A DNA stretch of 64,000 bases from Setoptus koraiensis (lineage: Eukaryota; Animalia; Arthropoda): NCBI GenBank assembly GCA_048013815.1, contig CM106585.1, positions 10,416,001 through 10,480,000 on the forward strand, in the 5' to 3' direction. How positions within the stretch are numbered: position 1 is the first letter of the stretch; each line of letters opens with the position of its first letter. Position numbers and translations under genes: made by a program. This document shows positions 1 to 3,465 of this stretch, in pieces. A model generated the notes under the pieces. The model searched no databases. It saw only the letters and a program-made list of their open reading frames with translations, and was not told the origin of the DNA.

Positions 1-776
1 GTAATCATCAAAATAGTGGTGGAAACAATGCAAATAATAGTAGCACAAATAATAATAGCAGCAGCAACAATAATAATAATTGCTCAAGTGGTGGCGGTAA
101 TAACAACAATAGAGATAAAAGATTAAGAACACAAATATTGCCAGAGCAATTAGATTATCTATATCAGCGCTATCAACAAGAGTCAAATCCATCCCGAAAG
201 ACATTAGAGACCATAGCTCAGGATGTTGGCCTTAGCAAACGGGTAGTACAAGTGTGGTTTCAGAATACTAGGGCCCGCGAGCGTCGAGGTCAATTGCGAA
301 CCTCGCATGTTGTTGCACAGCAGCAAGCCGCCCAAGCCCAACATCAGGCACCAAGCGCCGGAAACAACAACACCAACAACAGCCAAAATAATAACAGCAA
401 AAACAACTTGTCAGCATCAATGGCCAACAGCGGCTTAGGCACTAATCAAAATAGCAACAACAGCTTGAGCGACGGCAACAACAACAATTTTGCCTCAACT
501 GATTTGAGCAGCGCCAATGCGGCCGCCGCTGCAGCAATGGCCGCCCTCATGAGCAACGGGGCCGGCGGTGTCGGATTTGCACCACTAGATTTGTCCAGTA
601 GCAAAGCACTAATGGCAGGTTTAAGTCAATTGAGCGCACTCACTGGTGGCCAGCTCAATTCCATTTATGCCAATGCAGGCCAAACTGGTGCACAGGTGAG
701 AGGCGCAGCCGTGGATAACTCTAGCAAGTATGATTTTGATGATGACGATGATGACGATCAATCGATGGACTATTGA
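1..776 (+). CDS. zfh2: 3' portion (5'-partial) of a zfh2/ZFHX3-4 family zinc-finger homeodomain transcription factor
   Basis: The frame is open from nt 3 (N/S/G-rich linker) to TGA at 774-776. It encodes [60 protein letters not shown], which closely matches the third homeodomain of ZFHX3/4 and fly Zfh2 (KRLRTTI.PEQL...SNP.RK.L...[14 protein letters not shown]). The ORF-track start at 138 is an internal TTG (Leu), not the true start. Confidence 0.9.
114..293 (+). other. Homeobox (ZFHX HD3-type)
   Basis: 60 codons from GAT AAA AGA (DKR) through helix 3 [15 protein letters not shown]. Confidence 0.93.
582..596 (+). other. PLDLS CtBP co-repressor binding motif
   Basis: In-frame CCA CTA GAT TTG TCC = PLDLS, the canonical PxDLS motif. 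Confidence 0.75.
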
Positions 777-1652
777 TGCCCATACGCAATAGAAAATACA
801 TTGCACATACATTGCATATAGGGTCAGCGTGTGCCACAAAGCGAAATACAGATAGATAGATGGATTGATAGTTGGAAAGAACTAGAGTGAAAGAAATGAT
901 GATGACTTATTTCTTTATTTATTTTCCAGCCTAACCCTACCAATGAGAGCGAGAGGCAGCCTCAGCAGAATGAAAGTGCCCTCGTAAGAGCGATACACCT
1001 AGCTTAAATTATAAGTTTAGTCACAGTGAGTCTTAGATGAATGTGCTTTGCTGATTATGATGTTAATGATTATCACTATTATTATTACTATTATTATTAT
1101 TAGCATTATGATTTGAATAAATTATTATTATTATTATTACTAATTTATTAATTATTATTTAGCAAAAGAATCGTTTTTAGTTTTTCCTTCTTTTTCTGTT
1201 CAAGAAACCCTTTTTTCGCGAAAAAAACCTTGTCATTCTTTTAGTTAATGCTCTCTTAATATGTTTGGTTCGGCCATTTACATCTACATTTCATTCGCTT
1301 TAATAGCTTTTACCTTCTGTCGTAGACGTCTATCAGCCTGTAGTGTAGCGGGTCTGGCCCGAACACATCAATTGATCTTGGCAACAGCAACAACGAGCAA
1401 GTGGCTCTAATCTTATTAACACGATGATGGCCAGTTATAGAAATATTGTGATACTAAATTGGATTTTTTCTGCTCCTAAATGAAGAAAGAATTTACCTAA
1501 AGAAGTAGAGAGAATAATAATAAATGAAAAACGAGGAAAACGGACGGGCGTTATTAAAGCAATTTCAAATTACTACCCAGGCCAGATTGGTTTTTCTTTC
1601 TGGCCAGTGAACAACAGTTTACAAGTTTCATTCGACATAATGAACACTATAT

Positions 1653-1657
1653 CACAC

Positions 1658-1709
<52 letters not shown>
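1653..1709. repeat. (CA)n microsatellite
   Basis: About 28 CA units with one interruption. Confidence 0.95.
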
Positions 1710-1714
<5 letters not shown>

Positions 1715-1855
1715 ATTCACATATTGGACTTGATAGATTTGCATACTAAAATACACACTTCATATTTAGGCGCGATATCAAATAATAGTGCCAAGTAAGC
1801 TGGATTAAGTCCGGTCCGAGCTGATATTGTTTAGTTGGATCGGCGAGAAAACTAC

Positions 1856-2722
1856 AGTTCCTAAAAAGTTGTATTAATTAGAAGAGATTAATAATATATA
1901 GTCGCCATGTTATGATTGAGCAGCCGAACGACTTTAATACGACGATAGCAAATTGCTATCAAATATAGAAGATAACTATCCGAAGCGGGATAGAATAATC
2001 GCACTACGAAAGTTCCTAAAACTTTATACACTTACAAAATACTATTGCAAAAATGCACTTATAAAAGATTTAAAATATAAATAGAGAAAAGAAAGATAAT
2101 GTACATATATAGAGAAGATTTATCAGCTATCTGAAGAGAGAGTGACTGGCAAGCCGTGTCACAAGGACAAACGAATGCACCCACCGAAGAGCTTGACTAT
2201 TAAGGAAAACCGATGGCACTCACTCACACGTTTAGATGTTTAAACGTTTAGATAGAGCTAAGCATTCATGAAAGCATAAATAGGTAGCGTAAATTTTGTA
2301 CACGACGACGGCGACAAATAGTCGTATACTTGTCATTGGACGCAACATTTGTCACGCGGTTGCTCAGCGCAATTGATCAACGATTAAATTTTCATCAATG
2401 ATCTAATTGATGGTCGGCCATCGAGAAAGCGGGAGCGCCCAAGAACAAAGTTGGTATGACAAGTAAAAAATGAGTAACTCATAGTTCCTAATATAATCCC
2501 GGTTTACACTCTGGCTAACTGTAACGGTTTGGTTTAGGCGCGTATAGGCGCGCCCGTTGTAAGCAAGTTATCTAATAGTGACGACTGATAATGCTGGTGG
2601 CGTCTTGCGTTAGCTGACACCACCAAACAAATTTTGTGATTAGCGATAGAGAGTCACAACCGGGACAACACACACACCGGCCACAAGTTTTGCAAACTGA
2701 TGATCTCAACTTGTAGTTCCTA
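1856..2722 (+). promoter_or_regulatory. Four miR-276-3p 8mer target sites (AGTTCCTA)
   Basis: AGTTCCTA at 1856-1863, 2011-2018, 2483-2490 and 2715-2722 is the reverse complement of miR-276 nt 1-8 (UAGGAACU). I saw no other copy in the window. Confidence 0.75.
2700..2708 (+). promoter_or_regulatory. bantam 8mer target site (ATGATCTCA)
   Basis: Complementary to bantam nt 1-9 (UGAGAUCAU); lies 6 nt upstream of the fourth miR-276 site. Confidence 0.45.
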
Positions 2723-3377
2723 AAACTATTATTACTATTACTATATTATTATTATTATTATTATATATTAAGCCAGCAGACGGGAACGTTTTTTGAGCGT
2801 TGTGTTGTGAGGCGCTTATAGCACAACGCGATCGAGAGGCGTTCGTCCGTCAGTCACCTTACCTGTCTATAGAGCACGTATCGACACAAGCTGTATCAAA
2901 TTGTGTATGTATCAAATTGTATATGTATCATTGTATGTGTATCATTGTATATTGTAGCGCTGTATGCAGTGGTCACTGTATAACTGTCGCGCGCTGTATC
3001 ACTGTATATAAAAGGAAAAAAACGAAGCAAGAAGCATAGAATAAAGTTGCACCGATTAATTGTATATTGTATACTTATTACTAATCTTTTAGCTGTCAGT
3101 GGAGCCCGCTATCTGGCCGGCCTATTGACAATGATAATTATAATTAAGCAGCAGCATTGTATAAAACGTATCACTGTCTGTATGTCTCGAATGTGTGCGT
3201 TGTAAATAGAAGCTGACAATAAACGAACGAACGAATAATGACAACCGAAAATAATAACTCAGTGACAGTTGCATTTGTGCCTGTGTGTCGGATCAAAGCA
3301 GCTTGCCGGGCTTAATTGGCGCGCTGGCTCGATAATGGTTCGCTTCTCATGGCGCTACAAACAAACGCAAGCGGCCA

Positions 3378-3465
3378 TGAGCGGCCAGTCGGACGATGAG
3401 CGGCCAGTCGGACGGTGAGCGGCCAGTCGGACGGTGAGCGGCCAGTCGGACAATGAGCGGCAAGT
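3378..3465. repeat. 19-bp minisatellite TGAGCGGCCAGTCGGACG(A/G), 4 copies + partial
   Basis: Units start at 3378, 3397, 3416, 3435 and 3454. Confidence 0.9.

What the first reader, a model, noticed from the sequence alone, without database searches (positions are those of the whole stretch)
1856..2722. Four perfect miR-276 8mer sites clustered in the zfh2 3' UTR
Seen: AGTTCCTA occurs four times within 867 bp, all on the sense strand just downstream of the zfh2 stop, and I found it nowhere else in 64 kb. A given 8-mer is expected about once per 65 kb at uniform composition. The flanks differ between copies, so this is not a tandem repeat. Site 2 has extra pairing (nt 9, and GCAC opposite miR-276 nt 16-19). 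Known: AGTTCCTA is the exact 8mer for arthropod miR-276-3p (UAGGAACUUCAUACCGUGCUCU). From memory (please verify), zfh2 is a predicted multi-site miR-276 target in Drosophila. Inference: a miR-276-zfh2 repression circuit has been kept under selection in this lineage and may be deeply conserved across arthropods.
Basis: partly seen in the sequence, partly recalled or inferred. Interest (0 to 1): 0.75.

Follow-up and report, generated by a model that had tools for sequence, protein, structure and literature searches.

The report
miR-276 sites in mite zfh2 tail
Four perfect landing sites for the microRNA miR-276 sit in the untranslated tail of this mite's zfh2 gene. The same sites recur in zfh2 of other mites, a pseudoscorpion, a beetle and a brine shrimp, so a pairing predicted long ago in fruit flies looks old and kept by selection.

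Summary
AGTTCCTA occurs at 1856, 2011, 2483 and 2715, all on the + strand and nowhere else in 64 kb (0.42 expected). In the 48.8 Mb assembly it is the only chain of three or more copies spaced 500 nt or less.

The sites lie 1.08-1.94 kb after the stop (774-776) of a 2569-codon Zfh2 exon. They sit in an AT-rich, ORF-free block that ends near AATAAA signals at 3040 and 3218. This is a probable 3' UTR, but no transcript data were available.

The genome has one mir-276 hairpin. Its predicted mature arm is identical to sequenced Dermatophagoides farinae miR-276-3p.

The two closest relatives found, both plant-metagenome contigs, each carry five perfect 8mers after the zfh2 stop. An oribatid mite has three. 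Sarcoptes, a pseudoscorpion, Tribolium and Artemia each have one, and the last two also carry several 7mers. No antisense 8mer occurs in these flanks. Three sampled species have none.

In an unbiased k-mer test on seven orthologous flanks, AGTTCCTA is the top non-repeat word.

Drosophila zfh2 was already predicted as a three-site miR-276a target in 2005. This is therefore a new member of a known kind, with new evidence of deep but patchy conservation. Repression itself is untested. The scan's notes show no earlier report of this on other DNA.

The parts
1..776 (+). End of the giant last coding exon of zfh2 (2569 codons, beginning 6.9 kb upstream of the window). It holds the third homeodomain at about 111-299 and the stop TGA at 774-776.
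   Evidence: Searches give the ORF. (Pfam) finds three homeodomains plus C2H2 fingers. One search gives best hits named Zfh2/ZFHX3/ZFHX4. One search finds no fourth homeodomain or C-terminal exon further downstream in the window.
777..3245 (+). Inferred zfh2 3' UTR of about 2.3-2.5 kb. It is AT-rich (27-45% GC), has no long ORF, and is followed by a switch to 50-64% GC.
   Evidence: One search gives the composition. One search finds no + strand ORF above 79 aa. One search gives the AATAAA positions. There is no transcript evidence. The Artemia zfh2 transcript contig has at least 4 kb of 3' UTR.
1856..1863 (+). miR-276-3p 8mer site 1 (+1080 from the stop)
   Evidence: One search gives a duplex of -13.4 kcal/mol.
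2011..2018 (+). miR-276-3p 8mer site 2 (+1235). It has pairing at nt 9 and three supplementary pairs. Its 13-nt form ACGAAAGTTCCTA is identical in relatives L017 and L018.
2483..2490 (+). miR-276-3p 8mer site 3 (+1707)
   Evidence: One search gives -15.1 kcal/mol.
2715..2722 (+). miR-276-3p 8mer site 4 (+1939)
3040..3045 (+). AATAAA, candidate distal poly(A) signal. It is the first one after the last site.
   Evidence: U/GU-rich sequence follows it.
3218..3223 (+). AATAAA, second candidate distal poly(A) signal. It lies at the AT-to-GC composition switch, with a GU-rich stretch about 55 nt downstream.
1116..1121 (+). Proximal AATAAA (another at 1519-1524). If used, it would give a short 3' UTR isoform lacking all four sites.
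   Evidence: Its use is untested.

Best explanation
The four AGUUCCUA words are working target sites for miR-276-3p in the distal half of a zfh2 3' UTR of about 2.4 kb.

The single-copy mir-276 gene on the other contig would give the mite-type mature RNA UAGGAACUUCAUACCAUGCUCG. Loaded into Argonaute, its nt 2-8 pair with AGUUCCU, and the 3' A lies opposite nt 1. Four 8mer sites spaced 155, 472 and 232 nt apart should add up to strong deadenylation and translational repression of the Zfh2 transcription factor wherever miR-276 is expressed. Use of a proximal poly(A) signal (1116 or 1519) would let a short isoform escape.

Shown here: the sites, their non-randomness, their strand specificity, the cognate miRNA gene, and retention of the same word in zfh2 3' flanks of distant arthropods.

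Inferred: that the transcript runs through 2722, that miRNA and mRNA meet in the same cells, and that repression follows.
For: Sites and statistics.

miRNA gene. Its mature arm is identical to sequenced D. farinae miR-276-3p (PMC10722260).

UTR reading.

Closest relatives found have the same three-homeodomain Zfh2, with the third homeodomain 92-93% identical. L017 has five 8mers at +917 to +1172 (0.10 expected in 19.8 kb). L018 has five at +1305 to +2414 (0.25 expected). Apart from (ATT)n and (CA)n tracts, the only matches between these UTRs and the window's are the sites themselves.

Further species: Medioppia has three 8mers. Sarcoptes has one at +499. Cordylochernes has one at +94. Tribolium has seven seed sites between +334 and +1220. 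The Artemia transcript has one 8mer and three 7mer-A1 sites.

In total 21 sense 8mers and no antisense 8mer occur in these flanks.

Unbiased test: AGTTCCTA is the top non-simple 8-mer across seven flanks, 9 observed against 0.28 expected.

Drosophila prediction.
Against: There are no RNA data for this organism. The 3' end is inferred, and AATAAA signals at 1116 and 1519 lie upstream of the sites.

The Rfam score of the hairpin (47 bits) is below the family's gathering score (62).

No sites occur in 10 kb after the stop in Halotydeus or in the sampled Uloborus copy. None occur in the first 3 kb in Cloeon, nor in the unnamed L025.

Site spacing is wider than the range usually linked to cooperative action, which I state from general knowledge.

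The flank ACGAA, shared by sites in three species, is not explained by pairing beyond nt 9.
Confidence: 0.8

Rival explanations
1. The word is the core of a binding site for an RNA-binding protein or another small RNA, and its match to the miR-276 seed is incidental.
For: The shared upstream flank (A)ACGAA in sites of three species, and a general A-rich context, are not explained by miR-276 pairing beyond nt 9.
Against: The conserved core is exactly the 8mer of a conserved miRNA encoded in the same genome. In Tribolium and Artemia the word decays into 7mer-m8 and 7mer-A1 forms, as miRNA sites do, rather than keeping one fixed longer motif. Outside the three closest species the flanks vary freely.
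Confidence: 0.07
2. The sites are real words under selection but lie outside the mature zfh2 mRNA, in DNA downstream of the poly(A) site. They would act as a DNA-level element such as transcription-factor sites.
For: AATAAA at 1116 and 1519 precede the sites. zfh2 is followed by a long gene-free stretch that could hold enhancers.
Against: All 21 8mers in eight species are on the sense strand and none on the antisense strand. A DNA element would not be expected to keep one orientation. In Artemia the sites lie inside an assembled transcript. The AT-rich block runs unbroken from the stop to about 3250.
Confidence: 0.07
3. Chance, or copies spread by a local repeat or duplication, with no function.
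For: Short similarity of 16-23 nt at 75-88% surrounds the sites. Elsewhere in the genome a 492-bp tandem repeat carries the word in several units.
Against: My Poisson estimate is about 1e-5 such chains per genome. There is no repeat unit beyond the immediate flanks. The same word is independently enriched in orthologous flanks of distant species.
Confidence: 0.02

Closest known systems
Drosophila melanogaster zfh2 as a predicted multi-site miR-276a/b target (Burgler and Macdonald 2005, MovingTargets, PMC1180435; Stark et al. 2005 as cited in PMC2773040)
   Same: The miRNA family is the same, the target gene is orthologous, and there are several sites in the 3' UTR (three in the fly prediction, which required sites in regions conserved with D. 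pseudoobscura).
   Different: Here there are four perfect 8mers in a chelicerate, with five in each of two relatives. The miRNA is the mite type (A16, G22). The fly pairing was a computational prediction within Drosophila. I could not fetch the fly UTR to count 8mers myself, and Stark 2005 is not in the held library.
let-7 : lin-41, the textbook deeply conserved multi-site miRNA-target pair
   Same: An old miRNA keeps several seed sites in the mRNA of a developmental regulator across very distant animals, while the rest of the UTR does not align.
   Different: let-7:lin-41 is experimentally proven and spans bilaterians. As far as I know, miR-276 is confined to arthropods. The pairing here is untested at the bench, and sites are missing in some sampled lineages.
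Tribolium castaneum zfh2 (Dev Genes Evol 2009, PMC2773040)
   Same: It is the orthologous gene. Its authors speculated on miRNA control of zfh2 by analogy with the fly.
   Different: In the passage I read, the paper cites only the fly result and reports no Tribolium sites. Here the Tribolium 3' flank shows one 8mer, two 7mer-m8 and four 7mer-A1 sites within 0.9 kb.

Membership tests
Canonical animal miRNA 8mer target site in a 3' UTR | Watson-Crick match to miRNA nt 2-8 plus A opposite nt 1 | tested here: met
   AGTTCCTA occurs four times, set against the mature arm UAGGAACU... of the genome's own hairpin. Duplexes show 8-9 contiguous seed pairs.
Canonical animal miRNA 8mer target site in a 3' UTR | Cognate miRNA encoded by the same genome | tested here: met
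   There is one locus, G000:C2:8370919-8370940(-), with a hairpin fold of z -6.6.
Canonical animal miRNA 8mer target site in a 3' UTR | Site lies within the 3' UTR of a mature mRNA | tested here: inconclusive
   Composition, lack of ORFs, distal AATAAA signals and absence of downstream exons fit a UTR. There are no transcript data, and proximal AATAAA signals exist.
Canonical animal miRNA 8mer target site in a 3' UTR | Kept in orthologous UTRs above background | tested here: met
   Six non-discovery species hold 5 against 0.26 expected. Two close relatives have five 8mers each. AGTTCCTA is the top non-simple shared 8-mer.
Canonical animal miRNA 8mer target site in a 3' UTR | miRNA-dependent, seed-dependent repression | not testable with these tools
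   Needs reporters, knock-down or Argonaute CLIP.
mir-276 precursor family (Rfam RF00637) | Match to the family covariance model at the curated gathering score | tested here: inconclusive
   The score is 47 bits against a gathering score of 62, so one search lists nothing. The match is full length (1-90 of 90) with E 1.2e-10.
mir-276 precursor family (Rfam RF00637) | Mature 3p arm with the family sequence, on a stable hairpin | tested here: met
   The arm is 22/22 identical to sequenced dfa-miR-276-3p and 20/22 to the insect form used as the pattern. Minimum free energy is -35.4 kcal/mol, and 0 of 200 shuffles fold as well.
mir-276 precursor family (Rfam RF00637) | Expressed as an RNA of about 22 nt | not testable with these tools
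   No small-RNA data are available for this organism.
Zfh2 / ZFHX3-4 zinc-finger homeodomain proteins | Several homeodomains and C2H2 fingers in one very long polypeptide | tested here: met
   The 2569-aa exon product has three homeodomains plus C2H2 fingers.
Zfh2 / ZFHX3-4 zinc-finger homeodomain proteins | Closest named relatives are Zfh2/ZFHX3/ZFHX4 | tested here: met
   One search returns 531 hits. The named ones are all of this family, and chelicerates are nearest in the best local segment (89%, against about 80% for beetles).
Zfh2 / ZFHX3-4 zinc-finger homeodomain proteins | ZFHX3-type finger (PF24056) and a fourth homeodomain with the conserved C-terminal tail | tested here: not met
   Neither is found in this exon or downstream in the window. 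Sarcoptes, L017 and L018 also have three homeodomains, and so does fly Zfh2 as I recall. This marks a reduced form and does not exclude membership. Upstream exons were not examined.

The most novel reading that the evidence does not exclude
miR-276:zfh2 is an ancestral arthropod miRNA-target pairing. It would have been kept since before chelicerates and pancrustaceans split, lost or moved in some lineages, and built up to four or five perfect 8mers in tiny plant-associated mites. That would make it one of very few miRNA-target pairs traceable across the whole phylum.
Probability: 0.5. Interest if true: 0.6.

Novelty: new member of a known kind. Interest (0 to 1): 0.45.

Why it matters
Few miRNA-target pairs are known to persist over hundreds of millions of years. 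Most target sites turn over quickly even when the miRNA is conserved.

Here one pairing, predicted in flies in 2005, recurs as the strongest shared word in zfh2 3' flanks of acariform mites, a pseudoscorpion, a beetle and a brine shrimp. It is also the only non-repeat island shared by the otherwise unalignable UTRs of three related mites.

This gives a concrete and testable case for studying how a miRNA tunes a dose-sensitive patterning factor. Zfh2 acts in appendage and nervous-system development in insects, which I state from general knowledge and from PMC2773040. It also gives a marker of working miRNA targeting in a highly reduced mite genome.

It does not reveal a new kind of mechanism.

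Tried and rejected
**Close relatives by protein search.** The word-index search on residues 1330-2420 and the full HMMER search with the last 1200 residues found only distant orthologues, matching about 500 conserved residues. The closest relatives came from a metagenome scan with an alignment of the third homeodomain instead.

**Look-ups that failed.**
- The Dermatophagoides isoform is not on record.
- The Tachypleus gene is too long for DNA.
- One look-up failed on a machine error and was repeated.
- Stark et al. 2005 is not held.

**Repeat origin of the sites.** Rejected.

**A further coding exon downstream.** A fourth homeodomain or C-terminal tail downstream would have made the region an intron. 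Rejected.

**Sites elsewhere in the gene.** The 7.7 kb exon holds no AGTTCCT at all. The many AGTTCCT words inside spider and pseudoscorpion zfh2 coding sequence fall in Val-Pro or Ser-Ser codons of conserved peptides. I did not count them as sites.

**bantam gene search.** This was prompted by a bantam-type 8mer next to site 4. It gave only a three-mismatch hit with a broken seed, no better than the control.

**Other AGTTCCTA pairs in the genome.** One lies in coding sequence that looks Toll-like by eye (no family scan run), one in a 492-bp tandem repeat, and one in unannotated sequence.

**Gene model.** Only the single last exon was searched, by reference.

Full report
**1. The observation**

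AGTTCCTA occurs four times in the window, at 1856, 2011, 2483 and 2715. All copies are on the + strand and none is elsewhere on either strand. Dinucleotide shuffles give a mean of 0.42 and never reach four. All four copies read AGTTCCTAA.

Among all 8-mers of the window, this is the only word other than (CA)n that forms a dispersed cluster of four or more copies within 900 nt. The other clustered words are tandem repeats or CAA/CAG-rich low complexity.

In the whole assembly (48.76 Mb, two contigs) the word occurs 543 times on both strands. Only six same-strand pairs lie within 500 nt, and three of them are the consecutive pairs of this chain. From those counts I estimate about 1e-5 such four-site chains per genome under a Poisson model.

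The other pairs are ordinary:
- two words lie inside an LRR-containing ORF ending in a TIR-like stretch (Toll-like by eye, no family scan run);
- four words come from a 492-bp tandem repeat;
- one pair sits in unannotated sequence.

Around the zfh2 sites, similarity extends only 16-23 nt at 75-88%. They are therefore not copies of a larger repeat.

**2. Where the sites lie**

The window opens inside one open reading frame of 2569 codons. It starts 6.9 kb upstream and ends with TGA at 774-776. The product has three homeodomains and C2H2 fingers. Its relatives are named Zfh2, ZFHX3 or ZFHX4, and chelicerates are nearest.

Other chelicerates have a fourth homeodomain and a conserved C-terminal tail. 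No such exon exists anywhere downstream in the 64 kb, so the gene ends at 776. Sarcoptes and the two closest relatives also stop after the third homeodomain.

From 777 to about 3250 the sequence is AT-rich (27-45% GC) and has no + strand ORF above 79 codons. It then switches to 50-64% GC.

AATAAA occurs on the + strand at 1116, 1519, 3040 and 3218. The last one sits at the composition switch and is followed by a GU-rich stretch.

I read 777 to about 3060-3245 as the 3' UTR, with the four sites at +1080, +1235, +1707 and +1939. This is an inference, because no transcript data were available. The proximal signals could give a short isoform without sites.

**3. The microRNA**

A search of the assembly with the insect miR-276a sequence found one place, G000:C2:8370919-8370940 on the - strand, with two mismatches. 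A search with the mite form found the same single place, even when three mismatches were allowed.

Rfam's mir-276 model aligns over its full length at 47 bits and E 1.2e-10. This is below the curated gathering score of 62, so the default scan lists nothing. The 92-nt hairpin folds at -35.4 kcal/mol, z -6.6, and no shuffle folds as well.

The predicted mature 3p arm is UAGGAACUUCAUACCAUGCUCG. It is identical to dfa-miR-276-3p, which was sequenced at high abundance in Dermatophagoides farinae (PMC10722260).

AGUUCCUA is exactly the 8mer site for this RNA. Duplex predictions give 8-9 seed pairs at each site, and site 2 gains three supplementary pairs at nt 17-19.

**4. Comparison with other species**

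Protein searches gave only distant orthologues. I fetched their loci and counted sites after the stop codon on the sense strand.

| Species (locus) | Sites after the stop |
|---|---|
| Medioppia subpectinata, oribatid mite (L013) | three 8mers at +253, +1370, +2854 |
| Sarcoptes scabiei (L009) | one 8mer at +499 |
| Cordylochernes scorpioides, pseudoscorpion (L015) | one 8mer at +94 |
| Tribolium castaneum (L010) | one 8mer, two 7mer-m8 and four 7mer-A1 between +334 and +1220 |
| Artemia franciscana, intron-free transcript contig with 4 kb of 3' UTR (L014) | one 8mer and three 7mer-A1 |
| Halotydeus destructor (L008) | none in 10 kb |
| Uloborus diversus, sampled copy (L011) | none in 10 kb |
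| Cloeon dipterum (L012) | none in the first 3 kb |

A metagenome scan with an alignment of the third homeodomain then found the nearest relatives seen here. These are L017 (an ENA plant-metagenome contig) and L018 (with an identical copy in L019, from JGI). Both have the three-homeodomain architecture, and their domains are 88-92% identical to the window's, against 82-84% for other mites.

L017 carries five perfect 8mers at +917 to +1172. L018 carries five at +1305 to +2414. Expectations are 0.10 and 0.25 for the whole loci, and no shuffle reaches five.

These UTRs do not align with the window's, with two exceptions. All three have an (ATT)n tract, then a (CA)n or (CAGA)n tract, in the same order. 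And the miR-276 sites themselves match. ACGAAAGTTCCTA is identical in window site 2 and in sites of both relatives.

In the flanks where sites occur, there are 21 sense 8mers in eight species and no antisense 8mer. One antisense copy occurs in an unnamed, intron-split locus, L028.

Two marine metatranscriptome-like contigs of a Zfh2-family gene (L085, L068) also carry seed sites just after the stop. Their taxon is unknown.

**5. Tests without prior choice of word**

Take 3 kb after the stop in the six named species other than this mite (Halotydeus, Sarcoptes, Medioppia, Uloborus, Tribolium, Cloeon). AGTTCCTA occurs 5 times against 0.26 expected under per-species first-order Markov models (P 7.8e-6). 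Every higher-ranked word that was printed (the top 15 of the 48) is a microsatellite or tandem-repeat word.

Among non-simple words present in at least three of the seven species, AGTTCCTA ranks first of all 8-mers, with 9 observed against 0.28 expected. GTTCCTA and AGTTCCT rank first and second of all 7-mers.

The panel is only a rough control. miR-276 alone has more than one 8mer.

**6. What it is and how it most likely works**

The best reading is a set of working miR-276-3p sites that together repress Zfh2 output after transcription. The sense-strand restriction argues for an RNA-level, miRNA-type function rather than a DNA element or a fixed protein motif. So does the presence of sites inside a real transcript in Artemia. 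So does the decay into 7mer forms in insects and crustaceans.

The spacing (155, 472 and 232 nt) suggests additive rather than cooperative action in this mite. In L017 the sites are 43-91 nt apart. Expression, co-occurrence of miRNA and target, and repression are all untested.

**7. What is known**

Drosophila zfh2 is listed with three mir-276a-3p sites by a method that required at least three sites in regions conserved with D. pseudoobscura (PMC1180435). The Tribolium zfh2 paper cites Stark et al. 2005 for miR-276a/b control of fly zfh2 (PMC2773040). I could not read Stark et al. 2005.

Full-text searches for miR-276 with zfh2 or zfh-2 gave only three papers, and none deals with mites or with conservation beyond flies. 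miR-276 itself is well known in mites.

So the pair is already known as a fly prediction. The mite sites, and the evidence that the pairing spans chelicerates and pancrustaceans, appear new but are of a familiar kind.

**8. Organism**

Earlier notes of this scan call the genome an eriophyoid (gall or rust) mite. I did not test that.

Three things I saw are consistent with an acariform mite with a tiny genome:
- chelicerates are the nearest named Zfh2 relatives;
- the miR-276 is of the mite type;
- the assembly is 48.8 Mb in two contigs, and the closest relatives come from plant metagenomes.

No contig looked human, and nothing was withheld on that ground.

**9. Verdict**

Novelty: new member of a known kind. 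Interest is moderate.

Noticed in passing
window 2006-2018; L017 11240-11253 and 11339-11352; L018 12473-12486: Several miR-276 sites in three species share the upstream flank (A)ACGAA. ACGAAAGTTCCTA is identical in all three species, and a 16-nt form is identical between L017 and L018. miR-276 pairing explains only the A opposite nt 9. The rest may reflect common descent of one site or an added constraint.
   Followed up: partly
window 1067-1160, 1653-1716, 2720-2770: An (ATT)n tract, then a (CA)n microsatellite, precede the sites, and a second (ATT)n tract follows site 4. L018 has an ATT tract then a CA/CAGA tract before its sites, in the same order. L017 has CAGA-type tracts before its sites and its ATT-like match after them.
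   Followed up: partly
window 2701-2708 and 2180-2187: There are single 8mers matching the bantam seed (7 nt upstream of miR-276 site 4) and the miR-278 seed. A search for a bantam gene in the genome gave only a three-mismatch hit with a broken seed, no better than the control.
   Followed up: partly
window 3369-3460: A 19-bp unit (GAGCGGCCAGTCGGACGRT-like) is repeated about five times in tandem, right after the probable poly(A) region, at the start of the GC-rich block.
   Followed up: no
window 693-700 and 922-928: A consensus-like splice donor (CAG|GTGAGA) lies inside the last 80 codons, and an acceptor-like ttttccag lies 230 nt on. If used, they would swap the acidic C-terminus for a different short tail ending near 1004. 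There is no evidence for their use.
   Followed up: no
window 1-776 with L005 67-7773; L009, L017, L018: This Zfh2 lacks the fourth homeodomain and the conserved C-terminal tail (…HPxMY…GRNKL) that a spider, an oribatid mite and a pseudoscorpion have. Sarcoptes and the two plant-metagenome relatives also have three homeodomains. A PLDLS motif (CtBP-binding type, by my recollection) is invariant in all eight sequences aligned.
   Followed up: partly
G000:C1:15282800-15285250 (L098 1697-4591): A 492-bp tandem repeat of 5.9 copies at 84% identity carries AGTTCCTA on the - strand in four units. It is the only other group of four in the genome and is plainly repeat-derived. The units hold short repeated ORFs.
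   Followed up: partly
L011 10208-19727; L007 1478-6931; L015 10254-18651: AGTTCCT (7mer-m8) is frequent on the sense strand inside zfh2 loci of a spider, a spider-like Logan contig and a pseudoscorpion: about 7-13 words on the sense strand against 0-2 seed words of any class on the antisense strand. In the spider and the Logan contig they fall in Val-Pro or Ser-Ser codons of conserved peptides. Whether any of them acts as a coding-region site is open.
   Followed up: no
L041 12660-12667 and 13642-13649 (same in L040): An unnamed metagenome contig has a zfh2-like homeodomain (67% identity) and two sense 8mers 1.3 and 2.2 kb after the end of its open frame. The taxon and gene end are unknown.
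   Followed up: no
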